IMG/VR virus record: IMGVR_UViG_3300031857_000005
Coordinates: 240,366-304,365 of that record
Length of the DNA: 64,000 nt
Strand: one strand, 5' to 3'
Part shown: piece after piece, positions 43,200 to 60,266 of the stretch
Layout: each line of letters opens with the position of its first letter
Position numbering within the stretch: the stretch's first letter is position 1
Notes under the pieces: model-generated
Told to the model about the DNA's origin: nothing
What the model saw: the letters and a program-made list of their open reading frames with translations, nothing else
Database searches by the model: none
Program-made: the position numbers and the translations under genes

Positions 43200-43792
43200 T
43201 TGATGTTGTAAAATACGGAGAATTTAAACCGACGGGAAAACAAAAGAAGAAAAAACAAATAATTTTATCTCATACATCTAGAGATGTTAAAAACTATTTA
43301 ATGTCTTTAAAGTACCGATATAACGGAAAATACGACAAAGTTCCAAATTATATTGTTAACCGAGAAGGTAAAATTTTAAAACTTCTAAATGATAATGAAC
43401 ACTCTAATTATTTTTCAGAACCCAATATAAATAGGAACTCAATCATAGTATGTTTAGAGAATTTAGGATGGATGGAAAAAGAACCATTAAAAAATTCACA
43501 CATTAATTGGATTGGTAATATTTATAAGGAGAAGATATATGAAAAAAAGTGGAGAGATTACTTTTTTTGGCAACCATATACTGAAATTCAGATAGAAAAA
43601 ACTGCCGAATTATGTAATCATTTAATGAAAGAACTCTCTATAACAAAAGAATGTATCGGACATAATACTAAAATAAATGGTGTTGAAAGATATGAAGGTA
43701 TTGTGACTAAAAGTAATTTTGATAGTGAATTTACTGATGTTAGTCCGGCTTTTAATTTTGAACAATTTATAAAGCTAATTGAAAATGAATAA
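43196..43792 (+). CDS. Amidase_2 (N-acetylmuramoyl-L-alanine amidase)-like protein with a degenerate Zn site
   Basis: QIILSHT, NYIVNREGKI, NRNSIIVCLENLG, YTEIQI, TDVSPAF. Confidence 0.7.
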   Translation: MIDVVKYGEFKPTGKQKKKKQIILSHTSRDVKNYLMSLKYRYNGKYDKVPNYIVNREGKILKLLNDNEHSNYFSEPNINRNSIIVCLENLGWMEKEPLKNSHINWIGNIYKEKIYEKKWRDYFFWQPYTEIQIEKTAELCNHLMKELSITKECIGHNTKINGVERYEGIVTKSNFDSEFTDVSPAFNFEQFIKLIENE

Positions 43793-44399
43793 TTACGAGG
43801 AACTAAAAAAATTATTAGAATCATCAAGAAGATTACTTGGGGGGGATTTATTAAACGAAGAGTCTAATAGAATTAGAAAAAGTTATGGTATGATAACTGA
43901 ACAGTCTAACCCAACAACTGATATAACAAAAAAAATTAATCCATTAGGGGACTCAGAAGAAGAAATTGAATATGAGACTGCTGATAGCGGTGAAGAAGAA
44001 ACAGAGAGTAAACCTGAAAAGAAAAAAGCATATAGAATTTCGGGCGGAATTTTAGTTCTTCATGGAACAGATAGTACTGATATACAATTAACAACCGATG
44101 ATAAAATCGCATTCCAAGAAAGTATGGATGAGTTTGTTGCGGAAGTGGCGGAAATTGTGGACTTCAATAAACTAAATGTTTATGAAAATAATGTAGAATG
44201 GTCAGGTAAAATTACAGAATTGGATCTTGAGTTCTTCTTCTCAATTGGTGAAACTAAAGGGGTATACATAAATGGTACTATGATTAAGTTGGATGATGAA
44301 TTCTTAGAATTTGTTAATAAACTACAAACATACTACGAGAAATTTAAATCTAAGTGGTCTAAAGTGATTGCATCAAAAAAGAAAACACCTGAAAAATGA
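43785..44399 (+). CDS. Hypothetical protein, possibly head-associated
   Basis: ATG 43785; LLE, LLNE and ITE sites near the N-terminus. Confidence 0.6.
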   Translation: MNNYEELKKLLESSRRLLGGDLLNEESNRIRKSYGMITEQSNPTTDITKKINPLGDSEEEIEYETADSGEEETESKPEKKKAYRISGGILVLHGTDSTDIQLTTDDKIAFQESMDEFVAEVAEIVDFNKLNVYENNVEWSGKITELDLEFFFSIGETKGVYINGTMIKLDDEFLEFVNKLQTYYEKFKSKWSKVIASKKKTPEK

Positions 44400-44749
44400 A
44401 ACAATTCTTAAATACCAATTTTAAATACATCCTATTTGTTGGGGTTGGATTATTTGTTATGTACTTTATGGTTTATTTATTTACACCAAAACCTGAAATG
44501 TCAGAATTAGATAAATATAAATTAGAACAATTAGATAAAGACATTGACTCAATTTTAAAAAAACAACAACTGCTTGATAAAAGAATCTTAGAATATAAGA
44601 CAGAACTAAGTAAGATTGACTCAACAATTGCACAAGTCAGAAACCAAAAAACTATAATAAAAGAATATTATAAAGAAAAAGGTGAAGAAATAACAGGAAT
44701 GAAACCATCTCAAATTGACAGTTTATTCCATAAAAGATATAAGTATTAA
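44396..44749 (+). CDS. N-terminal TM + coiled coil protein (i-spanin-like)
   Basis: YILFVGVGLFVMYFMVYLF TM followed by heptads; near the amidase. Confidence 0.55.
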   Translation: MKQFLNTNFKYILFVGVGLFVMYFMVYLFTPKPEMSELDKYKLEQLDKDIDSILKKQQLLDKRILEYKTELSKIDSTIAQVRNQKTIIKEYYKEKGEEITGMKPSQIDSLFHKRYKY

Positions 44750-44750
44750 G

Positions 44751-45158
44751 ATGAAAAATTTATTAATTACATTATTGTTATTCGTTCCATTGTTATCATT
44801 TGGACAAGTTAAAAAGGACACAACACAGATTTGTTTCCCATATAGTGTTGGAAAACAAATTGCGTTAGATTTAAATAAATTAGATCAGTTAACTGAAGTA
44901 CTTAAATTAACTGAAACAGAACTTAAAGAAACTCAAAACAAAGTAAGTGTTCAAAACGATATTATCACTACAATGGAACTTAAAGAAGATAATTATGAGT
45001 TACAAATTCAAAAGGAACAAGAAAAATTTGGAATTGTTGAAGAACAAAATGAAGGATTAAGAAAAGATATTAAAAAAATTAAAACCAAAAATACAGTTAT
45101 TGAAATTGTTGGAGGGGCGATAATTGGTGCATTAACCTATATACTTATTTTTAAATAA
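44751..45158 (+). CDS. Secreted coiled-coil protein with a C-terminal hydrophobic anchor (spanin-like partner)
   Basis: MKNLLITLLLFVPLLSFG|Q signal peptide; C-terminal VGGAIIGALTYILIFK. Confidence 0.55.
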   Translation: MKNLLITLLLFVPLLSFGQVKKDTTQICFPYSVGKQIALDLNKLDQLTEVLKLTETELKETQNKVSVQNDIITTMELKEDNYELQIQKEQEKFGIVEEQNEGLRKDIKKIKTKNTVIEIVGGAIIGALTYILIFK

Positions 45159-45403
45159 TGGCACTATCACAAACAGATAAAAGAGAAATTGAAACATTGG
45201 TTAGAAAAGAGATTAAAGATTTCTTAGGATCAACTACTGTGAAACAGTTTGAAGATAAACTGTTAGATAGAATTTCCAAAGAAATGAAGAGAGGTAAACT
45301 AGAAAAAGATGTAAAAGACTTAATAATAAAATCATTCAGAGAATTCTATACGATAATGTATCAACAAAGAAGTTTCTGGGAATCAAAATTCAGAAGTGCG
45401 TAA
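45158..45403 (+). CDS. Hypothetical protein
   Basis: 81 aa; TAATG-coupled. Confidence 0.65.
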   Translation: MALSQTDKREIETLVRKEIKDFLGSTTVKQFEDKLLDRISKEMKRGKLEKDVKDLIIKSFREFYTIMYQQRSFWESKFRSA

Positions 45404-46104
45404 TGGAAAACCTAACCGACTTATTTAAAAAACAATTCAACCAAGAAGCCAATATGATTGGATTGACAGGTATTGATCAAGCAAAAGCGAGAAAAGAATT
45501 TACTGAAAATAAAAAGTCGGAAGATGATGATATTAGAAATAAATCAAAAGATTATCTTAAAGATGGTGTTGATTTATCCGACATTATGAAATTAGTTAAA
45601 AATAAAAAATTAACTAATAATAAAATCAAAGGTGAAATAAGAAAATTATTAAAGAAACCTGAAGAACTTAAAGATTTCTTAAAATCTTTAATTAGTAAAG
45701 ATAAGACTGAAACTAAAGAGGCAACAGGAACTGGAAGTTCGGGATCTGATATAACAACACCATTGTTTTCAGGTGAAGAACCCAAAAAAGTTGAAGCCAC
45801 AGAAACCGCGTCTTCAGGTTATGGAGTTGGTGCGTATGAAGGACCTAGTATTTGGGCAAAAACCACAAGTAAGAAGAATTGGAAACCATCAAGGAAGACA
45901 CAGATACCAGGAGGAAAATTCGTTCAGGTTAAAAAAAAATGTAAACGATTTCCCTATTGTAATCAGGGAGATATTAAGGCTCTTAATATATTTGAAAACG
46001 AAACTGTTAAAAATGTTATTGAGAAAGTAAGTAACACCTATAACTTACACGAGGAACATATAAAAGACATTATTTTATATGAGTTAAGAAAAACAAACAA
46101 ATAA
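45403..46104 (+). CDS. Putative head-internal / prohead core protein
   Basis: KEATGTGSSG, TETASSG..GAYEGP and CKRFPYC motifs. Confidence 0.5.
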   Translation: MENLTDLFKKQFNQEANMIGLTGIDQAKARKEFTENKKSEDDDIRNKSKDYLKDGVDLSDIMKLVKNKKLTNNKIKGEIRKLLKKPEELKDFLKSLISKDKTETKEATGTGSSGSDITTPLFSGEEPKKVEATETASSGYGVGAYEGPSIWAKTTSKKNWKPSRKTQIPGGKFVQVKKKCKRFPYCNQGDIKALNIFENETVKNVIEKVSNTYNLHEEHIKDIILYELRKTNK

Positions 46105-46129
46105 CGATATTTATTATAAAAACACAATT

Positions 46130-47479
46130 ATGAAAAGTAACACTTATTACGATAATTTATTTAGAAAAGTTCTAACCGAAACTTTAGAAGGAAAGGCTGA
46201 TGAGATAATGGAAAAATTAAAATTTAATCCTCCAGGGAAATCGTTTGACTATGTCCAAGAAGGAGAAACTTGTGAATGTGGAGGTGAAATGAAAGAAGGT
46301 GAATGTATGGAATGTGGATACATGAATGAAGAGATGAAAGAAAGTAGGTATGTTACATCCAAAGGAGGTAAATTCCCTAACGAAAAAAAGGAATTATCAA
46401 GACAAGATTCTGAATGGACTATGCCAGGATTTGATATGGAAGAATACTGTGCTCAATATTACGATATGGATCCTGAAAGATGTCAATCATATTATGATCA
46501 AAAAGAATATAATGATAATAGAGGTGAAATCGATGAAAGACTTCATGGTAAACAATCTCGTTTGGATAAAAACAAAAATGGAAGAATAGATTCGGAAGAT
46601 TTTAGATTACTTAGAAAAAAAGGAAAAAATACGGAAATGGAAGAAGGCAACGCATTTTCAGGAGCTCTTGCCAATGCTAAAAAAGAAGGTAAATCTCATT
46701 TTTCTGTTGATGGTAAAAAATATACTGTTAAAGAAAGTAAAAGACAAAATGATAATGGTGTTTTATATAAATTAGAATACATTAATGAAACCGCATTGTT
46801 TACTGAAGATGAAATAATAGATATTATTGAGGGTATTATTAAAGAAGAAAGTAAAACAAAAAATACGATTAAAACAGGTAAAACACCTGCAGGGTATATG
46901 GCATATGAAAAGTCACATAAAGGTTCGGGAAAAGAAGAAGATGACTATATGAAAAGTTTTGAGAAGAAAATGAAAGATTATCTTAAAGACGGATCTAAAG
47001 GTAAGTATGAAATGAATCCTAAACATTTTCCTATGGGTAATGGTGAAATTGAAAAAATGGAAAAAATGGCTTATGTACCATCAAATGCTGTACAGGATTA
47101 TGTAGATAACTTTACCGCCGCAGCATTAGAAAACTTAGACTTCAATGATGGGATAGCTCCAAATGAGGATTGGATGACAGATAACATTGAAGGTTCATCT
47201 AGAACGGGTAATAACCCTGAATGGGCAAATGCGGTTGAAACACCAACAAACAAGAAAAGAAACAAAATAAGAAAAGATAATTTACTTGGTAAACTAAAAA
47301 GAAAGGCATATAATAAATCTGTACAACCAGTAGTTTCAGATAAAACAGGTAATGAAACAGATAAAGCAAGTAAAGTTATGATGAAACTTGAATCAGTTGA
47401 AAACAAAAAAATTGAAAAACTTAATGAGGAGTTCGATAGAATGAAGTCGTTGATTGGTTATCAAGATAAGACACAATAA
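46130..47479 (+). CDS. Putative head-internal / scaffold-like protein
   Basis: Late motif at 46108; RKVLTE leader; CECGG..CMECG; EF-hand-like LDKNKNGRIDSEDF; MEEGNAF; C-terminal LNEEFDRMKSLIGY. Confidence 0.55.
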   Translation: MKSNTYYDNLFRKVLTETLEGKADEIMEKLKFNPPGKSFDYVQEGETCECGGEMKEGECMECGYMNEEMKESRYVTSKGGKFPNEKKELSRQDSEWTMPGFDMEEYCAQYYDMDPERCQSYYDQKEYNDNRGEIDERLHGKQSRLDKNKNGRIDSEDFRLLRKKGKNTEMEEGNAFSGALANAKKEGKSHFSVDGKKYTVKESKRQNDNGVLYKLEYINETALFTEDEIIDIIEGIIKEESKTKNTIKTGKTPAGYMAYEKSHKGSGKEEDDYMKSFEKKMKDYLKDGSKGKYEMNPKHFPMGNGEIEKMEKMAYVPSNAVQDYVDNFTAAALENLDFNDGIAPNEDWMTDNIEGSSRTGNNPEWANAVETPTNKKRNKIRKDNLLGKLKRKAYNKSVQPVVSDKTGNETDKASKVMMKLESVENKKIEKLNEEFDRMKSLIGYQDKTQ

Positions 47480-47526
47480 TTTACATAAAAAATATCTTTG
47501 TTATTATTCTCCATAGATACTTGTCT

Positions 47527-48231: not shown

Positions 48232-48232
48232 T

Positions 48233-49943: not shown

Positions 49944-50873
49944 ATGAATATTCCGAATTATTACGACATATTAGGTGTTCCTGAAACTGCAACCCAAGAT
50001 GAGATAAAAAAAGTATATCGTAAACTGGCAAAAGAAAATCACCCTGATGCTGGTGGTGATGAGGAAAAGTTTAAGCAAATTGCTGAAGCATATGATACTA
50101 TTGGTGACGATAACAAACGACAAGAGTATGATATGAGAAGAAAGAACCCATTTGCAGGAATGGGAGGAGGTGACGATATATTCCAACAGATGTTTAATCA
50201 GGCATTTGGTAATCGTAGACAAAAAAATGTGGTACATGATTTAGTTATTGATACTGAATTAAAAGTTACTGAATCATATTTGGGTGCGAATAAAGAAATC
50301 ACATATCGTAGGAAATTAAAATGTGATCCATGTAATGGTAGTGGGGGTGAGAAGAAAATTTGTCCCGAATGTAATGGACAAGGTTCTGTAGTGAGACAGA
50401 TGGGGTCTGGTATGTTTATACAAATGGTACAAGTTGCTTGTAACACTTGTTCAGGACATGGACGAGTTATTACAAATCCTTGTCATATTTGTAATGGTAG
50501 TGGGACTAAAGATGAGATGAAAACTGTTGAAGTTAAATTACCTAATGGTATTGATGATGGACAATTCATCCGATTACAAGGTGTTGGGGATTTTAGAAAC
50601 GGTGTTTATGGTAACTTAGTTGTTAGAGTTAAATTGGTTTCTGATAATAATTTTGAAAAGTACGGACCTCACTTAATTTATAATGCTTATTTCACATTGG
50701 ATGATTTGAAGAAGAGTGATTTTGAAATACCTCATCCTGACGGTACGGTAAGGTTAAGATTCCCAAAGACATTTGATACAACAAAACCCTTAAGAGTTAA
50801 ATCAAAAGGGTTTAAAGGTGAAGTGATAGGTGACTTGTTGGTTAACCAGCATGTCCGATTTGAAAGGGATTAA
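49944..50873 (+). CDS. dnaJ: DnaJ chaperone (J domain, zinc finger, C-terminal domain)
   Basis: YYDILGV...HPD; four CxxCxGxG repeats; TATCTTTG element at 49907-49914 upstream. Confidence 0.93.
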   Translation: MNIPNYYDILGVPETATQDEIKKVYRKLAKENHPDAGGDEEKFKQIAEAYDTIGDDNKRQEYDMRRKNPFAGMGGGDDIFQQMFNQAFGNRRQKNVVHDLVIDTELKVTESYLGANKEITYRRKLKCDPCNGSGGEKKICPECNGQGSVVRQMGSGMFIQMVQVACNTCSGHGRVITNPCHICNGSGTKDEMKTVEVKLPNGIDDGQFIRLQGVGDFRNGVYGNLVVRVKLVSDNNFEKYGPHLIYNAYFTLDDLKKSDFEIPHPDGTVRLRFPKTFDTTKPLRVKSKGFKGEVIGDLLVNQHVRFERD

Positions 50874-51050: not shown

Positions 51051-51536
51051 TTATTTTTGATAATAAATAATTATATCACCAATTATTTTATAAGTGAATG
51101 ATTGGTTAATAATTGATTCTCTTATCACAATATCATCATTTCTTGTTATTATAATCTCTCTAGTGTTAACATTATTGAATAATTTTTTTGGGTGACGGAT
51201 TGAGGTATTTATTGTTATTTTAAGATTATTATTTTTTATGTTGTAATGAGTAAATAATTGATAATCAAAACCTAAACGGTAATCACGAATCAATAATGCA
51301 CATTTATGTTTACAGGTATTAAATAAAATAAATGATTGATTAATTAAAACATCGTATATGTCCGACATTGAGTCCATGATTTCATCCGTTGGGACTCTAA
51401 TAAATTCACCACTACCGGTAATAGCTCGGAAAGATTCATAAGTTTGAACGATACTCAATGGTTGACCATTAATGGTAACATTTTTAATAGGAACACTCTC
51501 AACAATTATACTCTTAAGTAATGGTAATAAATTCAT
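51051..51536 (-). CDS. Hypothetical late protein with an LLKSIIVE leader
   Basis: ATG 51536 lies 6 nt after TATTTATA (minus strand, 51543-51550). Confidence 0.65.
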   Translation of the reverse strand: MNLLPLLKSIIVESVPIKNVTINGQPLSIVQTYESFRAITGSGEFIRVPTDEIMDSMSDIYDVLINQSFILFNTCKHKCALLIRDYRLGFDYQLFTHYNIKNNNLKITINTSIRHPKKLFNNVNTREIIITRNDDIVIRESIINQSFTYKIIGDIIIYYQK

Positions 51537-51551
51537 ATATAATATAAATAC

Positions 51552-51808: not shown

Positions 51809-52648
51809 ATGTTAAGTTATATCGGAGGTAAGAGTAAAATTGGAAAGTGGATAGTCCCTTTCTATGATAATAATATGGAAACATATGTTGAAACATTCGG
51901 AGGGATGTTTTGGTGTTTCTTCAACATGGACTTAAAACAGTTCCCAAACCTAAAGAAAGTTGTTTATAACGACTTTAATCCACTTAATTACAATCTGTTT
52001 AAATGTATTCAGAACCCAACTGAATTATTGAATGCAATTAACGCAATTGATTGTCAGAAATTTGGTGTAGAAGTAACTCCACCAATTTATAAAGAACAGT
52101 TTATCAGGTTTCAGGCTGAAATTTTTAGTGAAGGTTTCAGTGTAGAACCTGGTAATTATGAAGTTGCTGCTAAATACGCTTATGTCCTTACACAGGTTTT
52201 TAGTGGTTCTAAACCTGAGACAAGTTCATTCATTGACTTGAAAGGTAAATACAAATCAAAGTATCTTACATTTAGAGATAAATTATCTAAACCTGATTGG
52301 GTAGAACATTTCTTGAAAATTACGGATGTTGAAAATATGGATTTTGAGGATGTCATTAAAAAGTATGATTCACCAACAACATATTTTTATGTTGATCCAC
52401 CATATTGGAAAACTGAAAATTACTATTCAAATCACGATTTTGACAGAGAAGATCATGAAAGACTTGCAAATATATTAAAAGGAATGGAAGGTAAATTTAG
52501 TTTGTCGTATTATGACTTCCCGTTGTTATCGGAATGGTTCCCTAAAGAACAATATAGTTGGGAGAAAAAAGAATTCGCTAAGGCGGCGGCAGCCAAAAAA
52601 GGTACCAAACAAAATATGGGTGAAGAATTACTTATACTGAATTATTAA
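51809..52648 (+). CDS. DNA adenine methyltransferase, D12/Dam family
   Basis: YIGGKS, YVETFGG, YNDFN, YVDPPY, LSYYD, EELLILNY. Confidence 0.92.
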   Translation: MLSYIGGKSKIGKWIVPFYDNNMETYVETFGGMFWCFFNMDLKQFPNLKKVVYNDFNPLNYNLFKCIQNPTELLNAINAIDCQKFGVEVTPPIYKEQFIRFQAEIFSEGFSVEPGNYEVAAKYAYVLTQVFSGSKPETSSFIDLKGKYKSKYLTFRDKLSKPDWVEHFLKITDVENMDFEDVIKKYDSPTTYFYVDPPYWKTENYYSNHDFDREDHERLANILKGMEGKFSLSYYDFPLLSEWFPKEQYSWEKKEFAKAAAAKKGTKQNMGEELLILNY

Positions 52649-52697
52649 TTAATTTATTCATTTTTATTTATCGTAATATTTATAGTAAAAACATCAA

Positions 52698-54542
52698 ATG
52701 AAATTAGTAAAAATTTTATCATCGGTAATCGTAGAAAATGTTGATCCTAAATTTAGATTAACAGAAATATCAAATAAATTAATGAATCAACTTGTCCTTA
52801 AATTTAGTAACGAAACTAAAGATTCTGAGGATGATATTAAAAGTTATATTGGTGATTTTGATAAATATAAAAACGGATTACCTGCCGACAAACGAGACAT
52901 TACAAAATATACATATGATCAACTTAAGTCTGTGATTTTATCAAAAAGAGTTAAGAAGGAAGAAGGTGATATATTTAAAACCTATATGAAGGGTCCTGGT
53001 AAAGGTTCTGATCAAAGACAAGTTAAGTCTATGATTAAGAAATTCTTAGAGATAAGAAATTATCTACCTGAACCTAATAGGGATATTATGAGATACCCTT
53101 ATTTGAAGTTGGTTGAATTGATACAAAATAAATTTGGTGGAATTATTACCAAGGCGGCATTTGAAAAATATAAGAAAGAAAGAAACGATTTAACAAACGA
53201 GCAAATACTTTCTTACATTGAAAGATATGTTGATTTGTATGATAGATTGGAAGCAAATACGCCACCGATTATGTTAATGTCATTTGATGAGTTGGAGGCG
53301 GCATTGGATCATTTACCTGACGGAGATGATACACCAAAGAAAAAAGGTGACGACTTTAAAGATATTGAAACAATCTACGATAAAGATAATTTGTATATCT
53401 TCAAACCAAACGGTAAAGAACAATGTATTAGATTAGCACATGGAAGACCTTGGTGTACATCAAGAATTGGTGGTGGTAACTTATATTACAACTATCGTTT
53501 GGAAAATAACTTAACACTTTACTATGTTATTGACAGAGATACCCCATTTGATGATTTGAACTTCGCGGTTGTTATCTTGGTTGATGAGTATGGAAGAAAA
53601 AGAATTGCCGATGGTAAAAACATGGCTGGTGGATATTCAGGACACAGAACAGAGACTTGGGATACAATCTCATCTAAAGTTCCGAAGTTAAAAGACAAAG
53701 AATACTTATTTACTCCAGATCCACTTACTGATAGAGAAAAAGGATTATTAAGAAAATACAAACATATTAATGTTCAAGACGATGCAGTTAAAGAACTTGG
53801 TTCGGTTGAAGATGCTGAGTTTTGGTTAGAAATTGCAAGTCCAAACCTAACAAACAAACCAAGAGTTTATATTAATTTACCTTCAGAACTTAAAAAGAAA
53901 TATATTTCTTTGGGTATGGATTTAACAGGTGATATGATTACAAGTTCAGAACCTGATGTTGTTAAATATTATTTGGCAAGAAAGATTGATTCGTTGAGAA
54001 CCAAAACTTTAAATAATCTTACCACCGCGGATATTGCTTTGATTAATATGCCGGGAATGAAAAATCTTAAGGAAGAACTTAAGGTTAAATATGCCGGACA
54101 GTTGGCAACAGAAGGTGACAACATTGTTAAGATTACATACCCGAATGATGCGTCATCAAAATATATTGCATTGTTTGGTTTTGATGAATTATTTGAAAAT
54201 TTACCTGAAAGTATTACATATTTAACAATATCAAATAAATCAAACGATTCTCTTGATTTGGATATACCGGCAAGCATTGGTAAGTTTACAAATATAATAG
54301 CATTGGTACTTGAGAATTGTGTAAAATCACTACCTGAAGAATTAGGAAGAATGGAAGGATTAACATTCCTAACATTACAGAATAATAAAAATCTTCAAAG
54401 TCTACCTGAGTCTTTAGCGGATTTAGAGTATTTGGATCTTATTGCGTTATCGGGATCAAATCCAAGTGTTGTAATACCTGAAAGATTAAAGAATATGATG
54501 GTTGAAGAAGGTGATGGTTTTTACTATATTTCAAGAGACTAA
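52698..54542 (+). CDS. Late protein with a PcfJ-like (WC) domain and C-terminal leucine-rich repeats
   Basis: Late motif at 52677; ILSSVIVE leader; GRPWCTS...LYYVID; IPASIGKFTNI, LPEELGRMEGL and LPESLADLEYL LRRs. Confidence 0.7.
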   Translation: MKLVKILSSVIVENVDPKFRLTEISNKLMNQLVLKFSNETKDSEDDIKSYIGDFDKYKNGLPADKRDITKYTYDQLKSVILSKRVKKEEGDIFKTYMKGPGKGSDQRQVKSMIKKFLEIRNYLPEPNRDIMRYPYLKLVELIQNKFGGIITKAAFEKYKKERNDLTNEQILSYIERYVDLYDRLEANTPPIMLMSFDELEAALDHLPDGDDTPKKKGDDFKDIETIYDKDNLYIFKPNGKEQCIRLAHGRPWCTSRIGGGNLYYNYRLENNLTLYYVIDRDTPFDDLNFAVVILVDEYGRKRIADGKNMAGGYSGHRTETWDTISSKVPKLKDKEYLFTPDPLTDREKGLLRKYKHINVQDDAVKELGSVEDAEFWLEIASPNLTNKPRVYINLPSELKKKYISLGMDLTGDMITSSEPDVVKYYLARKIDSLRTKTLNNLTTADIALINMPGMKNLKEELKVKYAGQLATEGDNIVKITYPNDASSKYIALFGFDELFENLPESITYLTISNKSNDSLDLDIPASIGKFTNIIALVLENCVKSLPEELGRMEGLTFLTLQNNKNLQSLPESLADLEYLDLIALSGSNPSVVIPERLKNMMVEEGDGFYYISRD

Positions 54543-54854: not shown

Positions 54855-54866
54855 TTTCATTTCGTA

Positions 54867-54921: not shown

Positions 54922-55677
54922 ATGATTTATACACCAGAACTTATCAAATCCGTAGCCCCTTCAGTATTCGCAACATCAGCATCAAGCAAGTTGTCTGACA
55001 AGTATGTCTTTGTACCAACCGATCAAGTCATTGAATTTTTCGATCGTGAAGGTTGGGAAATTTCAGATGTTAAACAAACAGGTAAAGGAATTCACGCAAC
55101 CCATCAAATTAGATTCCGTAATGGAGAACTTCCTTCAGTTGGAGACACATTGGTTGAAGCAATTGTTCGTAACTCACACAATGGTATGTCAACATTCTCA
55201 GTCAGTGCTGGACTTCACCGATTGGTATGTTCTAACGGACTTACAGTACCTACATCAGTTGCCGACAAATTTAATGTTAGACACAGTGGGTTTGAACTTG
55301 ACGATGTGAAACGATTGATGGACGGTTTTGCAAAGAAACTACCAACAATCCAAGGATCTGTTGGACGAATGATGGAACGAGAACTTACCATTGACGAACA
55401 AATTCAATATGTTCAGAAAGCGTCAAAAATCCGATGGGCTGAAGGATCAATCCCAACTGACAACCAACTTGTTGACATCCTTACACCAAATCGTGTGGAA
55501 GATAGTAATAACGACTTGTGGACAACCTTCAATGTAGTACAAGAGAAGTTTGTACGAGGAGGGTTTGACTACCGAACTAAAACAGGACGAAAGTCAAAAC
55601 TACGAGATCTTAAAAGTATCTTGGCGGTAAACAACATCAACACAAAACTTTGGGAACTTGCCGAAGAAATGATTTAA
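54922..55677 (+). CDS. DUF932/DUF945-family protein
   Basis: APSVFA, SDKYVFVPT, NSHNG, RLVCSNGL, DLWTTFNVVQE, NTKLWELA. Confidence 0.85.
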   Translation: MIYTPELIKSVAPSVFATSASSKLSDKYVFVPTDQVIEFFDREGWEISDVKQTGKGIHATHQIRFRNGELPSVGDTLVEAIVRNSHNGMSTFSVSAGLHRLVCSNGLTVPTSVADKFNVRHSGFELDDVKRLMDGFAKKLPTIQGSVGRMMERELTIDEQIQYVQKASKIRWAEGSIPTDNQLVDILTPNRVEDSNNDLWTTFNVVQEKFVRGGFDYRTKTGRKSKLRDLKSILAVNNINTKLWELAEEMI

Positions 55678-55684
55678 AAACAAC

Positions 55685-55707: not shown

Positions 55708-55712
55708 CTATT

Positions 55713-56054
55713 ATGGAGAATAGTGAAATAAAATATTTTAAAAAGATTGATGACTTTATTACTTCTTTATTGGAGAAAACGAATAAAGTGTACAGTGTTA
55801 TTGAGTGTATGGATTATATTCCGATTACACCTGAACTTTTATTAACTAAACGATTTACAATTGAGTATCTTGATAGTAAATCTTATGGAGGTTCTTTAAT
55901 CCATACTGAAGGTATTTTTAGAAATAATGCTGGTATCTATTTGTATTTATCTAAAATGGAGGTTGAGACTACTTATAAAATAAAAGTAATATACGACATA
56001 TCACAACTTGATGAAGTTGTGTTATTCATAAAAAATTTAACAAGATTAAAATAA
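55713..56054 (+). CDS. Hypothetical protein
   Basis: 113-aa ORF. Confidence 0.6.
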   Translation: MENSEIKYFKKIDDFITSLLEKTNKVYSVIECMDYIPITPELLLTKRFTIEYLDSKSYGGSLIHTEGIFRNNAGIYLYLSKMEVETTYKIKVIYDISQLDEVVLFIKNLTRLK

Positions 56055-56055
56055 A

Positions 56056-56370
56056 ATGGAAATTACAGGAAATCAATTACAAGAAAAAATAAATAATGGT
56101 GAGAAAGTAATCGTTGAATTATGGGCAACTTGGTGTGGACCCTGCAAAATGATGAAACCAATTTTTGAAAGAGTTGCAACTGAAAATACTACTAATGTAC
56201 AGATGTATACGATGGATGTTGATCAAAACAGAGAAGTTGCAATGGCATTAGGGGTTAGGAGCGTACCGACAATTAAAGTATTTAATGGTGGGAATGTAAC
56301 TAACACAAGAGTTGGGGTTCTCCAAGAAAATGAAATAAAAGGTTTAGTTCAAGAATTAATCAATGGATAA
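56056..56370 (+). CDS. trxA: Thioredoxin
   Basis: WATWCGPCK; VRSVPT. Confidence 0.93.
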   Translation: MEITGNQLQEKINNGEKVIVELWATWCGPCKMMKPIFERVATENTTNVQMYTMDVDQNREVAMALGVRSVPTIKVFNGGNVTNTRVGVLQENEIKGLVQELING

Positions 56371-56647
56371 GGTAGTAGTATTATTCACAATGGAAGGATG
56401 TCCTTTTTGTGTTGAGATGAAAGATATGTTAGTTAAAGAAGGGATTGATTTTGTTGATCGCGACATTGACGAATATGAAGAGGAATATAATATGTTTGTT
56501 GAGATAACAGAGAATGAATTTGTTCCGGCATTTATGTTAATTGAAAATCCTGAGACAGAACCGATTAGTCAATTATTTGCACCTGATAGAGATTATCAAG
56601 ATTTAGAAGACGGTGTCAAGATAATTAGAGAATGGATTGAGAAATAA
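56363..56647 (+). CDS. Glutaredoxin/NrdH-like redoxin
   Basis: GCPFC; FVPAF. Confidence 0.8.
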   Translation: MDKVVVLFTMEGCPFCVEMKDMLVKEGIDFVDRDIDEYEEEYNMFVEITENEFVPAFMLIENPETEPISQLFAPDRDYQDLEDGVKIIREWIEK

Positions 56648-56652
56648 AAAAT

Positions 56653-56681
56653 AAACCCCACCTTTTAGGATGGGGTTTTTT
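56653..56681. terminator. Bidirectional terminator between convergent genes
   Basis: AAACCCCA...TGGGGTTT with flanking A and T runs. Confidence 0.8.
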
Positions 56682-56682
56682 G

Positions 56683-57381
56683 TTAGAATAGAATTATATG
56701 TTCTAATAAATCTTGTTTAAGGTACGGTTTTTCACCATCAGGATTCAGGACATCATCAATTAAATTATAATCCGACAAACGCTCTCTAAATGAGTCCATA
56801 TTAAAATCAAATACATCAAGAATAAGTGACTTAATTGATTTCTTGTCAATTTTTGAGTCGGATATAATTTTAATTTTTAAATCTTCATTATTATCTTCCT
56901 CAGTGGTGAAATAAAATGATACTTCATTGACACCTAATAAATTAAACATATGGTTCATTATGTAATGTGAGTAATATGTGTTTAACCTTCCACAATCTAA
57001 ACTATAACCATATGGGAATTCTGATGAAATTGATATTTCTGAAATATCAGGTTCAGGTTCCTCAACAAAAATATCTTTCTTTACCATAACCCAACCCTTA
57101 TGAATTGTGTTTATATCCTGATTATATCTAACAACATCAATGGTATTAATATCTGACATTTCCAGCTCCTTCAGGGTATCACCAAAAGATTCCTTGAACT
57201 CATTTTTAATTTCGTTTATGTCTAAATACTCATTTGATGTTGTTAAACCATTAACAACCATAAATGCACCACAATCTGTGACTTGGATAATTGATTTTTC
57301 TGTTTTGTTGATTTTTGAGAGAATAAAGTCGGCAAATAAATTTACGATTCCTCTTTTTGAATTTTTGTTAATTAATCTCAT
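56683..57381 (-). CDS. Degenerate S-adenosylmethionine synthetase (MetK)-like protein: N- and C-domains only, catalytic motifs lost
   Basis: By-eye alignment to the MetK N-domain, the DRSAAY helix and the C-terminal FD..PW.K.D motif (see findings). Confidence 0.6.
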   Translation of the reverse strand: MRLINKNSKRGIVNLFADFILSKINKTEKSIIQVTDCGAFMVVNGLTTSNEYLDINEIKNEFKESFGDTLKELEMSDINTIDVVRYNQDINTIHKGWVMVKKDIFVEEPEPDISEISISSEFPYGYSLDCGRLNTYYSHYIMNHMFNLLGVNEVSFYFTTEEDNNEDLKIKIISDSKIDKKSIKSLILDVFDFNMDSFRERLSDYNLIDDVLNPDGEKPYLKQDLLEHIILF

Positions 57382-57433
57382 AACTATTAAATTTTTATAA
57401 TGTGTATGAAATTAAAACAACATTATAAATAGT

Positions 57434-58450
57434 TTAGTAATAAAGACGATCAGGTAACCCGTCATTGATATTCTCAACAACTTTTCTATTATCTGGATAG
57501 TCAGGAACCCTGATTCTTAAAAAATCATCACTATCGCCCATGTAATGGCGTAACATTGATGAGTAATCACCATATTCAAATAAAGTATCCTCATATCCAG
57601 CAAATGAATTTAAAAAATTCTCAATATCACTTTTAATGTTTTTAATTTTAATATAAGGTATATATACGGTTTTTAAACCGTTTTTGTTTTCAACCCAACT
57701 GTGCTTACCCTCAAAGTAAGTTGATAACTCATCAAATACCTCCGAGTACACTTCATCATTATATGCCTGATTGTAAGCCTCATCACCCAACCAACGAAAA
57801 CTATTCATCAAATCATTTAAATCACCTTTAAATAATGAATTCATAGAGTCCTCATCCTCAACAACAGACATCACATTTGATTCAGTAATGATAAATCTAC
57901 CATCGTCATCCGACATATCTCTAAACAATTCACTTTTATAATCATCTAAAGATAATTCTTGATTACCAACCAATTCTAAAACTCTCTCGGCTAATAATTT
58001 CATATTCTTTTCGTTAAGTTCTTCAACAATATCTTTATAAACATCGTAAACGGTATCACTATAAGGTTCCCACCAATCCTCATCTAAAACATTTTTTACA
58101 ATATCTCTATCGTTATATTCTCTTGAATACTGGTTGTCCTTAAAAAAATCGGATAACTCAGATAAGTCACTCAACATTAAATAATAACCATCACCACGAA
58201 TTTCAACATCACTTAAAAAACCCTGAACAATCTCGTTTAGATATGAAGGATCGTTTTGTAGGCGATATAACATCAACTCATTTACAAACCGTTCATCTTC
58301 GTAGTGTATACTATCTAAATCAAAATAATTTAAAAATCCTGCGCGTTTTACATAGGAATAAAATCTTTTTACATCACCTCCGAATACATCAGAGATATCA
58401 TCCCATTCACCATTATTGAATTTATTTACTAAATCTAAAACTTTTGACAT
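57434..58450 (-). CDS. Highly acidic late protein
   Basis: 338 aa, D/E-rich; TATTTATA lies 3 nt before the ATG (58454-58461, minus strand). Confidence 0.7.
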   Translation of the reverse strand: MSKVLDLVNKFNNGEWDDISDVFGGDVKRFYSYVKRAGFLNYFDLDSIHYEDERFVNELMLYRLQNDPSYLNEIVQGFLSDVEIRGDGYYLMLSDLSELSDFFKDNQYSREYNDRDIVKNVLDEDWWEPYSDTVYDVYKDIVEELNEKNMKLLAERVLELVGNQELSLDDYKSELFRDMSDDDGRFIITESNVMSVVEDEDSMNSLFKGDLNDLMNSFRWLGDEAYNQAYNDEVYSEVFDELSTYFEGKHSWVENKNGLKTVYIPYIKIKNIKSDIENFLNSFAGYEDTLFEYGDYSSMLRHYMGDSDDFLRIRVPDYPDNRKVVENINDGLPDRLYY

Positions 58451-58462
58451 ACCTATAAATAT

Positions 58463-58491
58463 AAAAAAAGGTGGAAACTTCCGTAACCACC
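58463..58491 (-). terminator. Intrinsic terminator
   Basis: GGTGG-TT-AC-GGAA-GT-TT-CCACC followed by T7 on the minus strand. Confidence 0.6.
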
Positions 58492-58516
58492 CATTAATTT
58501 CTTTGGTAGAAATAAA

Positions 58517-58663
58517 TTACCTCTTGTTATAATACTTCTCAACGATTTTTTTAACTGACTCTTGAACAGTGGCATTTTTTACTTGCTGTGGCTGTCCTTG
58601 AGCCGGTGCTTGTTGAGTAGCGGGAGTTCCACCATTGTTCTTATTTTTGCATCCACACCCCAT
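58517..58663 (-). CDS. Small 48-aa MGCGC peptide (not in ORF track)
   Basis: MGCGCKNKNNGGTPATQQAPAQGQPQQVKNATVQESVKKIVEKYYNKR; has its own late motif (58694-58701) and terminator. Confidence 0.7.
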   Translation of the reverse strand: MGCGCKNKNNGGTPATQQAPAQGQPQQVKNATVQESVKKIVEKYYNKR

Positions 58664-58693
58664 AGCTGATTGTTTTTATTAGGTTTATTTTCT

Positions 58694-58753
58694 TATAAAT
58701 ATCTTAATAGAATGTATTTTGTAAATAATTTTGGTATATCAATAATATTTATA
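58694..58753. promoter_or_regulatory. Divergent pair of late motifs
   Basis: TATTTATA on the minus strand (58694-58701) and on the plus strand (58746-58753). Confidence 0.6.
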
Positions 58754-58757
58754 AAAT

Positions 58758-60266
58758 ATGAAAAAAGTAATTAGACTTACCGAATCAGATTTAATTAAAA
58801 TAATTAAAACTAAACTCAACGAAGAAGAATCTGAATTTATTGAAATTCCCGCAAATGAATATGAACAGTTATTATCTGTAACTGGATATAATGGTGCGGC
58901 TCTTGAAAAGACAAGAAGGTTTAGAGGTAAGAAAATAAAAGTAAACGGTAGGTTAGATATATCAGGTAAACCAGTTACAAATCTTGGAACAATATATCTA
59001 CAAGGATCATTAGAGGCAACTAGATCAAAGTTAGAAACTTTAAATGGTGTGACAATTACGGGGTCTAAATGGTACTATAATACACCATTGGAGTCTAAAG
59101 AAAAGATAAGGAAACGAAGAAAAGAATTGGATGATGCCCAAGAAAGAAGAGAAAATGGTGTGTGGGACTTAGATTATCCGAACATTGATGATGAGGGATT
59201 AAAAGCAAATGCTGCGTTTCAGTACCTTGTTGAAAATGGTGAGATAGAAGAAATAACATCAGAAGAAAAAAGAGAATTAAAAAATTTAGAACAAAGACAA
59301 CTTAATATTTCTGATAGAATGGAAGCGGAAAATGATGAGGAACTTTTATCTGAATTGCAAAGTGAATACGATGAATTACAAGAAGACATTGATGATTTAT
59401 TAAGAAAGGAAAATAATGATGTTTATGGATTGATACCCAAAAGTTTTGGACATTATAATATGTTATCTTTTATGACAACATATGATGATTTTAATGATGT
59501 GACAATTGCCGTTGGAACCGAATATGAAGCGGATGAATCAAAAAAAGAATGGGTTGAACAATTATTGGATGATGGAGGATATAGACACTTTAATCAATAT
59601 ACGGTTGAAAGACATATTGATGGTGATGAGGTTGCCGACTATTTTGAAGATGTTATTAGAGAATGGATATATGATGATCCTGATAATTATGACGTTGTAA
59701 AAGATTTAAGTAGAAGTCAAAAAGATGAACTTTGGGTTCTTAAAATGGAGAAATGGGTTTATGAAAATGAAGGAGTCAGGTTTCCAATAAAGTACCCAAC
59801 AAAAGAAGAAAATGGAACTGTATTTGATTTTTGGGATGAAGATGAAGAACACGAATTTCAATTAAAATATGAAGGAAATAAGTGGGTATTATATAAAGAC
59901 GGATCGATAGTTCAACCAGGTCAACTATATGATGATGAAGACACTGACGATCACCAAGATGATCGTGAAAGTAGAATTTCTGATATTGAATATGAAATAC
60001 AAGAAATTGAAGAAAATCCTGATGGTGATTTGGATGAAGATTCGGTTGAAGAAAGGGTTGAAGATAAAAAATACGAAATTTCTAATGACCCTATAAGTTG
60101 GTTGAGAAATTACGACATGGATGTTGATAATTTTATTGATGAAAAGGCATTTATTGAAGATGTTGCTGGTGATGAGGATTATGGTATTTTGAATGGTTAC
60201 GACTCAACATATGATATTATTAATTTGGGTAACCAAAGTTATGTTGTAATGATAACCGATAAATAA
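58758..60266 (+). CDS. Highly acidic late protein with an MKKVIRLTESDL leader
   Basis: N-terminal MKKVIRLTESDLIKIIK...LNE; very D/E-rich body. Confidence 0.7.
   Translation: MKKVIRLTESDLIKIIKTKLNEEESEFIEIPANEYEQLLSVTGYNGAALEKTRRFRGKKIKVNGRLDISGKPVTNLGTIYLQGSLEATRSKLETLNGVTITGSKWYYNTPLESKEKIRKRRKELDDAQERRENGVWDLDYPNIDDEGLKANAAFQYLVENGEIEEITSEEKRELKNLEQRQLNISDRMEAENDEELLSELQSEYDELQEDIDDLLRKENNDVYGLIPKSFGHYNMLSFMTTYDDFNDVTIAVGTEYEADESKKEWVEQLLDDGGYRHFNQYTVERHIDGDEVADYFEDVIREWIYDDPDNYDVVKDLSRSQKDELWVLKMEKWVYENEGVRFPIKYPTKEENGTVFDFWDEDEEHEFQLKYEGNKWVLYKDGSIVQPGQLYDDEDTDDHQDDRESRISDIEYEIQEIEENPDGDLDEDSVEERVEDKKYEISNDPISWLRNYDMDVDNFIDEKAFIEDVAGDEDYGILNGYDSTYDIINLGNQSYVVMITDK

What the first reader, a model, noticed from the sequence alone, without database searches (positions are those of the whole stretch)
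43785..60266. Family of late proteins with N-terminal leaders ending (I/L/V)-x-E: candidate capsid-targeted, injected cargo
Seen: otherwise unrelated proteins begin MKSNTYYDNLFRKVLTE (46130), MNLLPLLKSIIVE (51536, minus), MKLVKILSSVIVE (52698), MKKVIRLTESDLIKIIKTKLNE (58758) and MNNYEELKKLLE...LLNE (43785). The first four have their own late motif. Known: T4 internal proteins have a short capsid-targeting leader removed by the gp21 protease after (I/L)-x-E. Inference: an analogous packaging signal that loads effector proteins into the head for delivery at infection.
Basis: partly seen in the sequence, partly recalled or inferred. Interest (0 to 1): 0.6.

Follow-up and report, generated by a model that had tools for sequence, protein, structure and literature searches.

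The report
Capsid-address leaders on many phage proteins
A 304-kb uncultured T4-like phage puts short, strongly conserved N-terminal leaders ending in (I/L)-x-Glu on about 60 otherwise unrelated late proteins, which most likely are address-and-cleavage tags that load them into the forming head, as in phage T4 but about ten times more numerous; packaging and cleavage are not shown.

Summary
The five N-termini are in the sequence as described, and four have a TATTTAT late-type motif upstream. The bare (I/L/V)-x-E motif is at chance level: 157/371 proteins have it in residues 5-25, against 133/345 in an internal control window.

What lies behind it is real and much larger. The window is the end of a 304,365-bp virus record with a T4-type head module, including a Peptidase_S77 prohead protease and a gp23-type capsid protein.
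- **Leader families:** 60 of 371 genes start with one of three leaders, here called T1, T2 and T3. Their cargo parts fall into 53 BLAST-unrelated groups.
- **Window proteins:** 58758 is a canonical T1. 46130, 51536 and 52698 fit a looser hydrophobic 8-mer ending in Glu that is enriched 12.5-fold at N-termini. 43785 is not supported.
- **Invariant positions:** only Met1 and the Φ-x-E positions are invariant. Conservation collapses right after the Glu, and codons vary synonymously.
- **Modularity:** orthologues swap leader types at the same junction. One paralogue lacks both the leader and the late motif.
- **Capsid protein:** its site, placed by homology with T4 gp23, reads L-I-N-E|A.

Best reading (about 0.6): these are analogues of the T4 capsid-targeting sequence, cut by the prohead protease. 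Packaging, cleavage and injection are untested.

The parts
58758..60266 (+). Protein D (502 aa). It has a canonical T1 leader in residues 1-22 (window 58758-58823) with two candidate cut sites, LTE-9 and LNE-22. The cargo is acidic (pI 4.2) and belongs to a virus-only family with LRR-like repeats.
   Evidence: The T1 HMM gives E=5e-12, and the protein is a row of alignment A1. Orthologues in five relatives carry T1-type leaders, or in G005 a T2-type leader, at the same junction. The Atlas neighbours are all viral.
58746..58752 (+). TATTTAT late-type promoter motif of D.
46130..47479 (+). Protein A (449 aa). Its N-terminal leader, residues 1-17 (46130-46180), ends in VLTE-17 and resembles the second half of T1. 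A zinc-ribbon-like motif and an EF-hand-like loop follow. A conserved C-terminal domain starts at about residue 220.
   Evidence: It matches the 8-mer. Leader-end PSSM score is 13.0, tail probability 4e-5. Orthologues in all five relatives keep a leader of the same pattern and a TATTTAT motif. The EF-hand Pfam hits are below cut-off.
46796..46849 (+). Internal T1-like module of protein A (residues 223-240, LFTE...IIKE-239), just before the conserved C-terminal domain. It is a candidate internal processing or docking site.
   Evidence: Weak internal hit of the T1 HMM. The module is conserved in all six orthologues. The PSSM ranks E239 second in the protein.
46108..46114 (+). TATTTAT late-type promoter motif of A.
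51051..51536 (-). Protein B (161 aa), an ORFan. Its leader is residues 1-13 (51498-51536), ending in IVE-13.
   Evidence: It matches the 8-mer. PSSM tail probability is 0.003. No homologue was found in the five relatives. The ATG at 51536, not the upstream GTG, follows the late motif.
51544..51550 (-). TATTTAT late-type promoter motif of B.
52698..54542 (+). Protein C (614 aa). Its leader is residues 1-13 (52698-52736), ending in IVE-13, and a second candidate site is RLTE-23. The C-terminal part is a leucine-rich repeat region of a large virus-only family.
   Evidence: It matches the 8-mer. PSSM score for E23 is 11.6, tail probability 1.3e-4. Five of the six homologues examined in the relatives begin with a leader of the same pattern. 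The sixth, paralogue L095 in G004, starts exactly after the leader and has a TAnnTTTG-type promoter instead of TATTTAT.
52665..52683 (+). Two TATTTAT late-type motifs upstream of C (52665-52671 and 52677-52683).
43785..44399 (+). Protein E (204 aa). A conserved ITE-39 is the only plausible cut site.
   Evidence: No hit by any leader model and no 8-mer match. Glu12 is not conserved. ITE/LTE at about residue 39 is conserved in 5 of 6 orthologues and deleted in the sixth. It has no late motif of its own and overlaps the end of an Amidase_2 endolysin gene. The AF2 model is unusable (pLDDT 44).

Best explanation
The leaders are the counterpart, in this phage lineage, of the T4 capsid-targeting sequence.

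Proposed mechanism:
1. A short basic amphipathic N-terminal helix docks a late-made soluble protein onto the scaffolding core of the assembling prohead.
2. Once the shell has closed, the T4-type (Peptidase_S77) prohead protease cuts after the Glu of a hydrophobic-(I/L)-x-E site.
3. The cut frees the mature protein inside the head.

Three interchangeable leader classes serve about 60 genes in this genome:
- T1, 22 residues, with two such sites at E9 and E22.
- T2, about 11-13 residues.
- T3, 7 residues, resembling the MELITE propeptide of T4 Alt.
- Looser variants of the same pattern.

In the window, protein D is a canonical T1 member, A, B and C carry looser variants, and E is not a member.

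Shown here: the families exist; they sit at residue 1; selection acts at the protein level; the leaders are modular; the genome has an S77 protease; the leader ends resemble the capsid protein's homologous cleavage site.

Inferred: binding to the core, cleavage and presence in virions. More weakly inferred: that the mature proteins leave with the DNA and act in the next host, perhaps as anti-defence factors given their diversity and turnover.
For: 1. T4-type head module. The gene order is terminase, portal, two small proteins, S77 protease (79.6 bits, over cut-off), a 71-aa protein, a 466-aa acidic scaffold-like protein, and a gp23-type capsid protein.

2. Capsid protein site. Hand alignment with T4 gp23 places the T4 cut FLTE|AEIGG opposite FLINE|ATSEG, after E60. 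A PSSM built only from leader ends puts 3 of its top 4 hits in the 625-aa capsid protein within those first 60 residues: E23, E44 and E60.

3. Leader families. HMMs find T1 16, T2 21 and T3 23 members, nearly all starting at residue 1. Invariant columns are T1 M1, L7, E9, E22 (I20 at 90% or more); T3 M1, E7; T2 E11 (I5, the P7 position, at 90% or more).

4. Conservation cliff. In 106 non-redundant T1 copies from other contigs, L12 and E22 are 100%, P3 is I/L/V in 105 of 106, P2 is variable, and column entropy jumps from 0 at E22 to 2.8-4.0 afterwards.

5. Protein-level selection. Leader codons differ synonymously between copies.

6. Modularity. Cargo parts form 53 unrelated groups, and cargo homology crosses leader classes. 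D orthologues carry T1 or T2 leaders at one junction. A C-family paralogue lacks the leader and has a host-type promoter.

7. Timing. 29 of 60 leader genes have their own TATTTAT, and 28 of the other 31 lie downstream of a gene that does.

8. Solubility. 2 of 60 leader proteins have a TM-like segment, against 34 of 311 others.

9. Structure. In the AF2 model of a T1 protein the domain (residues 29-110) has pLDDT 84-91. The most conserved part, the leader, has pLDDT 54-59 and forms a separate helix 9-23.

10. T4 precedent.
   - The CTS MKTYQEFIAE has the same spacing: hydrophobic at P7, P4 and P3, Glu at P1.
   - Residues 4 and 7 target and residues 8 and 10 direct processing (PMC9026906).
   - Alt is cut at ITE-6 and LTE-619 (PMC5694885; N-terminus checked).
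   - T-even internal proteins are diverse apart from the CTS (PMC3012670).

11. Distribution. At least 590 T1 stretches occur in IMG/VR, 430 of them confirmed, but only 5 weak hits in 185,579 prokaryote genomes. All five near-complete 281-322 kb relatives examined encode S77. The three that were scanned for leaders hold many copies.
Against: - There is no direct evidence for packaging, cleavage or delivery. The clade has no cultured member, and no proteome or paper was found.
- Sixty cargo genes per genome is about ten times the T4 number, so space and copy number in the head are open questions.
- Most cargo parts are acidic (pI 4-5.5), unlike the basic DNA-binding T4 internal proteins. They could equally be cut and expelled.
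- T1-like modules also occur at internal positions (protein A residues 223-240; genome protein at L009:16671-17969 residues 295-316). The helix is therefore not strictly an N-terminal signal.
- A few T1-bearing proteins in databases have TM-like segments (6 of 110).
- The leader-end PSSM is not specific. In T4 it ranks the true sites gp23 E65 and gp24 E10 fifth and fourth, but also scores the uncut portal protein highly.
- Co-occurrence with S77 comes from one clade and is not independent evidence.
- The leaders have no detectable sequence homology to the T4 CTS (no hits in T4).
- The complex prediction of leader with protease could not be run.
Confidence: 0.6

Rival explanations
1. The leader proteins enter the prohead and are cut, but they are core or filler components that are degraded or expelled before or during DNA packaging. 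They are not cargo delivered to the next host.
For: Most cargo parts are acidic, like the T4 core proteins gp67 and gp68 and the scaffold, which are cut and leave the head (PMC5694885). The 238-aa protein in the gp67/68 position has an N-terminus like window proteins B and C and about ten I/L-x-E|S/N sites. Three leader proteins lie inside the head gene module.
Against: Fifty-three unrelated, fast-turning-over families are not what a structural scaffold role predicts. Many have compact folded domains with no further I/L-x-E sites. T4 itself shows that both fates coexist.
Confidence: 0.17
2. The leader is a docking or oligomerisation helix for some other phage-made assembly or partner, such as a hub, chaperone or compartment. 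It is neither cut by the prohead protease nor packaged.
For: The leader is an amphipathic basic helix. Internal conserved copies exist. A few carriers have TM-like segments. Sixty cargo genes is many for one head.
Against: Beyond the hydrophobic face, the strictly invariant residues are the Glu residues and the residue two places before each. That is the protease signature, not a requirement of a generic helix. The conservation cliff falls exactly after the Glu. The 7-residue T3 leader is too short to form a docking helix but matches the T4 Alt propeptide. No candidate receptor was found.
Confidence: 0.13
3. The shared N-termini act at the DNA or RNA level, as a recombination cassette boundary or a translation-initiation element. 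The peptide itself would have no function.
For: In T4 the two CTS copies of ipII and ipIII are identical at the nucleotide level, and conserved leaders could promote cassette exchange. MKK starts (AAA-rich) are common in this genome.
Against: The T1 copies in this genome use different synonymous codons at most positions (Ser TCA/AGT, Arg AGA/CGT/CGA/AGG, Leu CTA/TTA/TTG/CTT, Ile ATA/ATT/ATC) while the peptide stays constant.
Confidence: 0.03
4. Chance or composition: in an AT-rich genome rich in I, L, K, E and N, short I/L/V-x-E matches near N-termini are expected and mean nothing.
For: The bare motif is at chance level. This probably applies to protein E.
Against: The three family models and the 8-mer are concentrated at residue 1 to a degree composition cannot give: E-values down to 3e-17 and 12.5-fold enrichment. 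The T1 leader recurs nearly unchanged on hundreds of unrelated proteins in other contigs.
Confidence: 0.03

Closest known systems
Phage T4 capsid-targeting sequence (CTS) of internal proteins IPI, IPII, IPIII and the Alt propeptide, removed by prohead protease gp21 (Mullaney and Black 1996, as reviewed in PMC9026906, PMC3012670 and PMC5694885)
   Same: - Short N-terminal propeptide on otherwise unrelated proteins.
- Same spacing of hydrophobic residues at P7, P4 and P3 with Glu at P1 (T4 CTS verified).
- The T3 leader resembles the Alt propeptide MELITE.
- The phage has the same protease family (S77), a gp23-type capsid protein and the same head gene order.
- Cargo genes are diverse and turn over quickly.
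   Different: - No sequence homology to the T4 CTS.
- Three leader classes instead of one.
- The T1 leader is 22 residues long with two candidate sites.
- About 60 carriers per genome, against about 4-7 in T-even phages.
- Cargo is mostly acidic rather than basic.
- Internal copies of the module exist.
- The lineage is uncultured and about 300 kb, with a promoter motif shared with a Flavobacterium phage.
- Packaging is not shown.
Ejection and inner-body proteins of phiKZ-like giant phages (phiKZ, 201phi2-1, SPN3US), processed by the S80 prohead protease
   Same: A large head with about 50 different proteins, many packaged and ejected. N-terminal propeptides are removed after Glu. The paralogues gp53 and gp54 share identical 15-residue N-termini containing candidate sites (PMC5694885).
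   Different: The motif there is (A/S/G)-x-E and the protease family is S80. Only about eight proteins are known to be processed. No family-wide short leader shared by dozens of unrelated proteins has been described.
Encapsulin cargo-loading peptides (from my own knowledge, not tested here)
   Same: A short conserved terminal peptide addresses diverse cargo proteins to the inside of an HK97-fold shell.
   Different: That peptide is usually C-terminal, binds the shell protein directly and is not removed by a protease. Encapsulins are cellular compartments, not virions.

Membership tests
T4-type capsid-targeting propeptide system (functional class) | The phage encodes a gp21-type (Peptidase_S77) prohead protease within a T4-type head module that includes a scaffold core. 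| tested here: met
   PF03420 scores 79.6 bits, over cut-off. PHROG head maturation protease E=3e-42. The order portal, small proteins, protease, acidic 466-aa protein, gp23-type capsid protein matches T4.
T4-type capsid-targeting propeptide system (functional class) | A short N-terminal propeptide (7-20 residues) ends in (L/I)-x-E, with hydrophobic residues further upstream. | tested here: met
Met for D (T1 model) and for A, B and C (8-mer and PSSM).
T4-type capsid-targeting propeptide system (functional class) | The leader is conserved while the mature parts are unrelated. | tested here: met
   There are 53 BLAST-unrelated cargo groups among 60 carriers. Conservation falls off sharply after E22 in 106 copies. 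Database proteins share only the leader.
T4-type capsid-targeting propeptide system (functional class) | The proteins are made at the time of prohead assembly (late). | tested here: inconclusive
   The promoter-like motif TATTTAT is shared with structural genes, and 57 of 60 carriers have it or lie downstream of it. There are no expression data.
T4-type capsid-targeting propeptide system (functional class) | The protein is present in proheads or virions, and its N-terminus starts after the Glu. | not testable with these tools
   This needs virion or metaproteome mass spectrometry. No cultured member and no paper were found.
T4-type capsid-targeting propeptide system (functional class) | The leader alone is enough to carry a foreign protein into the head. 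| not testable with these tools
   Experiment only. Natural leader swaps and a leaderless paralogue show modularity, not sufficiency.
T4 internal protein CTS (sequence family) | Sequence homology to the T4 CTS MKTYQEFIAE. | tested here: not met
   The T1, T2 and T3 models find nothing in the T4 genome. Only the residue spacing is alike. This is therefore an analogue or very distant relative, not a member.
phiKZ-type S80 processing system | (A/S/G)-x-E motif and an S80 protease. | tested here: not met
   P3 is I, L or V in the T1 leader (105 of 106 IMG/VR copies) and I or L in nearly all T2 and T3 copies. The protease matches S77.

The most novel reading that the evidence does not exclude
A whole clade of roughly 280-320 kb uncultured phages devotes about one gene in six to proteins loaded into the head through three interchangeable leaders and delivered with the DNA. 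That is at least 60 genes per genome in more than 50 unrelated, fast-evolving families. It would be by far the largest virion-borne protein arsenal known in a phage, and probably a pre-made anti-defence or host-takeover kit.
Probability: 0.3. Interest if true: 0.85.

Novelty: new variant of a known kind. Interest (0 to 1): 0.66.

Why it matters
If the reading is right, three things follow.
- **Annotation:** a simple sequence rule (start with a T1, T2 or T3 leader) would label hundreds to thousands of dark-matter proteins in viral metagenomes as head-packaged and probably injected proteins. No Pfam or PHROG family covers any of those tested.
- **Evolution:** the T4 trick of addressing arbitrary proteins to the capsid would prove to be an ancient feature of phages with S77 proteases that can be expanded greatly. 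That would point to a large untapped pool of candidate anti-defence proteins.
- **Engineering:** very short (7-22 residue), strongly conserved tags could serve for loading proteins into capsids.

If the leaders turn out to do something else, they are still one of the most conserved and most widely reused peptide modules in these viruses, and they have no known function.

Tried and rejected
There is no result either way.
- **AF2 of protein E** with six orthologues gave pLDDT 44 and is unusable.
- **Fold searches** of the T1 cargo model against PDB and BFVD gave nothing at E<=0.001.
- **Pfam and PHROGs** on the five window proteins and on ten large leader proteins gave no informative family. Only sub-threshold EF-hand and LRR hits appeared.
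- **Megablast** of the region against 50,697 deposited phages found no match. **tblastn** of the 24-residue T1 leader against the same set also found none.
- **Literature string search** for LTESDL, RLTESD and TESDLTRIV found no paper. All hits came from OCR noise on a fourth, badly chosen term.
- **Cross-check of the leader-end PSSM on T4:** the true sites rank in the top 1%, but the uncut portal protein scores higher. I count this as weak support only.
- **My guess of a T9SS sorting domain** in the genome protein at L009:15247-16392 was not confirmed by NCBIfam. I do not use it for host inference.
- **Co-occurrence of T1 leaders with S77** in five relatives is real but comes from one clade, so I do not count it as independent evidence.
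- **Rejected readings:** a DNA/RNA-level element (synonymous variation) and a plain paralogous family with a conserved N-terminal domain (53 unrelated cargo groups, leaders of 7-22 residues).

The reads tools were not used.

Full report
**What the window is.** The 64-kb window is the right end (240,366-304,365) of a 304,365-bp virus record, about 31% G+C. Nothing close exists among 50,697 deposited phage genomes.

The genome has a T4-type virion module.
- A Peptidase_S77 (gp21-type) prohead protease, over the Pfam cut-off.
- A gp23-type major capsid protein.
- T4-like gene order: large terminase, portal, two small proteins, protease, a 71-aa protein, a 466-aa very acidic scaffold-like protein, then the capsid protein.
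- Baseplate wedge genes and replication genes within the window itself.

The nearest capsid proteins are in an uncultured 484-kb phage, a Microcystis phage and Flavobacterium phage vB_FspM_immuto, at 41-43% identity.

**Checking the observation.**
- A 'late motif' is real. TATTTAT (usually ATATTTATA) lies within 45 nt upstream of 94 of 371 genes that I called with a simple codon-usage caller. The 7-mer count in the 40 nt upstream is 91, against about 6 expected.
- These genes include terminase, protease, scaffold, tail sheath, tail tube and baseplate genes.
- Proteins A (46130), B (51536, minus strand), C (52698) and D (58758) each have it. E (43785) does not.
[ILV]-x-E occurs at 0.0185 per residue. 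It ends within residues 5-25 in 157 of 371 proteins, against 133 of 345 in an internal control window.

**What is really there.** Reading all N-termini of the genome shows three strongly conserved leader families, which I then modelled with HMMs.

| Family | Consensus | Length | Genes |
|---|---|---|---|
| T1 | MKKVIRLTESDLTRIVxRVIxE | 22 residues | 16 |
| T2 | MKELIRHILKEE or MNLQENIRRILREE | 11-13 residues | 21 |
| T3 | MK(I/F/Y)IITE(N/E/S)Q | 7 residues | 23 |

- Together they cover 60 of 371 genes, mostly in arrays between 3 and 120 kb.
- Almost every significant hit starts at residue 1. The clear exceptions still carry their own Met and look like fusions of two leader-bearing units: residues 295-316 of the protein at L009:16671-17969, and a second copy at residues 114-130 of the protein at genome 53,511-54,218.
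- With the leader removed, the 60 proteins fall into 53 BLAST-unrelated groups. The few cargo homologies cross leader classes: one T1 cargo matches a T3 cargo, and one T2 cargo matches a T3 cargo.
- Invariant columns are telling. T1 has M1, L7, E9 and E22, with I20 nearly invariant. T3 has M1 and E7. T2 has E11, with I5 nearly invariant.
- In other words, besides the start codon the fixed residues are the Glu and the hydrophobic residue two places before it. T1 looks like a T3-type box (ending LTE-9) followed by a T2-type box (ending I-x-E-22).

**The five window proteins.**
- **D** is a canonical T1 member (E=5e-12).
- **A, B and C** are not found by the three models. They fit the pattern the T2-type box shares: hydrophobic-hydrophobic-x-x-hydrophobic-[ILV]-x-E. 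This pattern occurs 35 times in the first 25 residues against about 2.8 expected from its internal rate, a 12.5-fold enrichment.
- **Scoring.** A scoring matrix built from the last six residues of 75 leader sites gives A's VLTE-17 a tail probability of 4e-5, C's RLTE-23 1.3e-4 and B's IVE-13 0.003.
- **E** fits nothing. Its Glu12 is R, K or S in four of five orthologues. Only an ITE/LTE at about residue 39 is conserved, and that whole segment is deleted in one orthologue. E overlaps the end of an Amidase_2 endolysin gene and precedes two small proteins that look, by eye, membrane-associated and coiled-coil. I do not count it as a member.

**Evidence from relatives.**
- *Spread of T1.* A word search with one small T1 protein returned 133 proteins. 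About 110 of them share only the leader, nearly letter for letter, on unrelated sequences.
- *Conservation profile.* In 106 non-redundant copies from those loci, positions not fixed by my search pattern show L12 100%, E22 100%, position 20 I/L/V in 105 of 106, position 21 variable, and column entropy rising from 0 at E22 to 2.8 and then 3.4-4.0.
- *Prokaryote genomes.* The same scan over 185,579 prokaryote species gave five weak hits, all in metagenome bins. The leader is a virus feature.
- *Relatives with S77.* Five near-complete relatives of 281-322 kb all encode an S77 protease. The three that were scanned carry 6-14 T1, 5-11 T2 and 11-21 T3 copies. T4 has none.
- *Orthologues of D.* They carry T1-type leaders in three relatives and a T2-type leader in a fourth, and the cargo starts at the same place in each.
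- *The C family.* It has leader-bearing members with TATTTAT upstream. One paralogue (L095) begins exactly where the others continue after the leader Glu, and it has a TAnnTTTG-type motif instead.
- *Orthologues of A.* They keep the N-terminal box and also an internal T1-like module just before the conserved C-terminal domain.

**Why a protease site.**
- T4 gp23 is cut after FLTE (E65). Aligned by hand on the conserved flanks, the capsid protein here reads FLINE followed by ATSEG, at E60.
- The leader-derived matrix, which never saw the capsid protein, puts three of its four best hits in that 625-residue protein inside the first 60 residues: E23, E44 and E60. Taking 60 of about 620 positions, I estimate about 0.003 by chance. 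Multiple cuts in the gp23 propeptide are known in T4 (PMC5694885).
- The scaffold-like protein and the 238-aa protein in the gp67/68 position are dense in I/L-x-E followed by S or N. The protease itself has ILIE-19, which parallels LIE-9 of T4 gp21 (PMC9026906).

Published T4 facts match in detail.
- The 10-residue CTS MKTYQEFIAE (two copies verified in the T4 record) targets through residues 4 and 7 and is processed through residues 8 and 10 (PMC9026906). That is P7, P4, P3 and P1, the same spacing as the nearly invariant I5 and invariant E11 of T2.
- Alt loses MELITE (PMC5694885), which resembles T3.
- gp24 starts MAKINELLRE, which resembles T2.

The matrix is not specific. On T4 it ranks the true gp23 and gp24 sites fifth and fourth, but it also scores two places in the uncut portal protein higher. 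Context must matter, and I treat this line as supporting only.

**Other properties.**
- T1 copies within the genome differ freely at synonymous codon positions. Selection therefore acts on the peptide, not on DNA or RNA.
- 29 of 60 leader genes have their own late motif, and 28 of the remaining 31 follow such a gene on the same strand with gaps of at most 150 nt.
- Leader proteins are depleted in TM-like segments (2 of 60 against 34 of 311). However, 6 of 110 database T1 proteins have one.
- Most cargo parts are acidic.
- An AF2 model of one T1 family (17 sequences) gives a confident alpha/beta domain (residues 29-110, pLDDT 84-91). The leader is a separate, low-confidence helix 9-23 (pLDDT 54-59), as expected for a segment that folds on a partner. 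The domain has no significant structural neighbour.
- C and D belong to large virus-only families with leucine-rich repeats. A has a zinc-ribbon-like motif and a conserved EF-hand-like loop. No function can be named for any cargo.

**Interpretation.** The best-supported mechanism is a lineage-specific analogue of the T4 capsid-targeting sequence. The leader docks a late soluble protein to the prohead core, and the S77 protease then removes it after Glu.
- I put about 0.6 on targeting plus cleavage.
- I put about half of that on the further claim that most of the mature proteins stay in the head and are delivered to the next cell.
- The main rival within the same framework is that many are core components that are cut and expelled. 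Most cargo is acidic, and the gp67/68-slot protein has a similar N-terminus.
- A docking helix for some other partner cannot be excluded, because the module also occurs internally. It does not explain why the Glu and the residue two before it are the invariant positions, nor the 7-residue T3 leader.
- DNA/RNA-level and chance explanations are rejected for the families. Chance remains the likely explanation for protein E and cannot be ruled out for protein B alone.

**Comparison with what is known, and novelty.**
- The principle is established in T-even phages: diverse internal proteins share only a CTS (PMC3012670, PMC9026906).
- New here are the scale (about 60 genes, 16% of the gene set, in 53 unrelated groups), three interchangeable leader classes, a 22-residue double-site leader kept almost unchanged across hundreds of contigs, internal copies, and the lineage itself, an uncultured clade of about 300-kb phages.
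- The late motif is shared with a Flavobacterium phage.
- No paper in the searched library contains the leader strings or describes such an expansion.
- By sequence the leaders are not members of the T4 CTS family. By mechanism they most likely work like it.
- I rate this a new variant of a known kind.

**A cultured handle.** Flavobacterium phage vB_FspM_immuto (160 kb, S77 protease) lacks T1-T3.
- It has small sets of proteins with shared N-termini of the same logic: three start MEN(T)FDLKKFLVE|N and two start MKKQILSE|Q...GIITE|S.
- TATTTAT lies upstream of some of its genes.
- I found no virion proteome for it. It is the obvious place to test the principle.

**Limits.**
- Gene calls and starts come from my own simple caller.
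- The leader counts depend on HMM thresholds (independent E<=0.3, start at or before residue 13).
- The capsid cleavage site is placed by homology only.
- The complex prediction could not be run.

Noticed in passing
window 60733-64000 (genome 301,098-304,365) against genome 1-3,269: The two ends of the record are a direct repeat of about 3.3 kb at only 80.5% identity. It includes a second copy of the glutamine synthetase gene and its neighbours. This could be a diverged terminal repeat, or two strain variants joined by assembly of a circularly permuted genome.
   Followed up: partly
window 61381-62580: A GlnII-type glutamine synthetase (NCBIfam E=2e-99, below the equivalog cut-off), present twice in the genome. 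It is an unusual auxiliary metabolic gene for a phage.
   Followed up: partly
window 40187-40987: A phage-encoded sigma-70 family sigma factor (PHROG E=4.5e-53; RpoD/RpoS-like). It is a candidate for reading the TATTTAT late motif, in place of a T4 gp55-type factor.
   Followed up: partly
window 43196-45158: A likely lysis cassette. An Amidase_2 endolysin (43196-43792) overlaps the start of protein E. Two small proteins that look membrane-associated or coiled-coil by eye follow (44396-44749, weak DUF2730 hit; 44751-45158, signal-peptide-like start).
   Followed up: partly
window 49944-50873, 51809-52648, 54922-55677, 56056-56647: DnaJ (E=6e-73), a Dam-family adenine methyltransferase, a DUF932 protein, and two adjacent small redox proteins with WCGPC and CPFC motifs. 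The thioredoxin and glutaredoxin labels are by eye only. Several of these have a TAnnTTTG-type motif upstream rather than TATTTAT.
   Followed up: partly
whole genome G000: TAnnTTTG, the Bacteroidota-type -7 promoter element, lies within 80 nt upstream of 42 genes against 23 expected. That is only 1.8-fold, so it is a weak host hint. My guess of a T9SS sorting domain in the protein at L009:15247-16392 was not confirmed.
   Followed up: yes
L009:16671-17969 (genome 141,671-142,969), just downstream of the capsid gene: A basic 432-aa protein with a T2 leader, two LAPFTE repeats, a Cys-rich stretch and an internal complete T1 leader with its own Met (residues 295-316). It looks like a fusion of two cargo units or a polyprotein, and is a candidate major internal protein.
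   Followed up: partly
L095 (G004:95,648-97,033): A leaderless paralogue of window protein C. It starts exactly after the leader position and has a TAnnTTTG-type promoter. It is a natural control suggesting that the same cargo can be made early without the address tag.
   Followed up: partly
Flavobacterium phage vB_FspM_immuto MW353176.1: genes starting at 1803, 103762, 118588; and at 25470, 111631: A cultured relative with an S77 protease has two small sets of proteins sharing N-termini that end in hydrophobic-x-E. TATTTAT lies upstream of the genes at 25470 and 59965.
   Followed up: partly
L009:13300-15177 (capsid protein): The gp23-type capsid protein is 625 aa, against 521 in T4. It has a long insertion after the conserved N-terminal arm, seen in the pairwise alignment.
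   Followed up: no
database proteins P0030, P0062, P0054, P0066, P0088, P0090, P0112: A few T1-leader proteins from other metagenomes carry TM-like hydrophobic segments. This fits poorly with packaging inside a capsid.
   Followed up: partly
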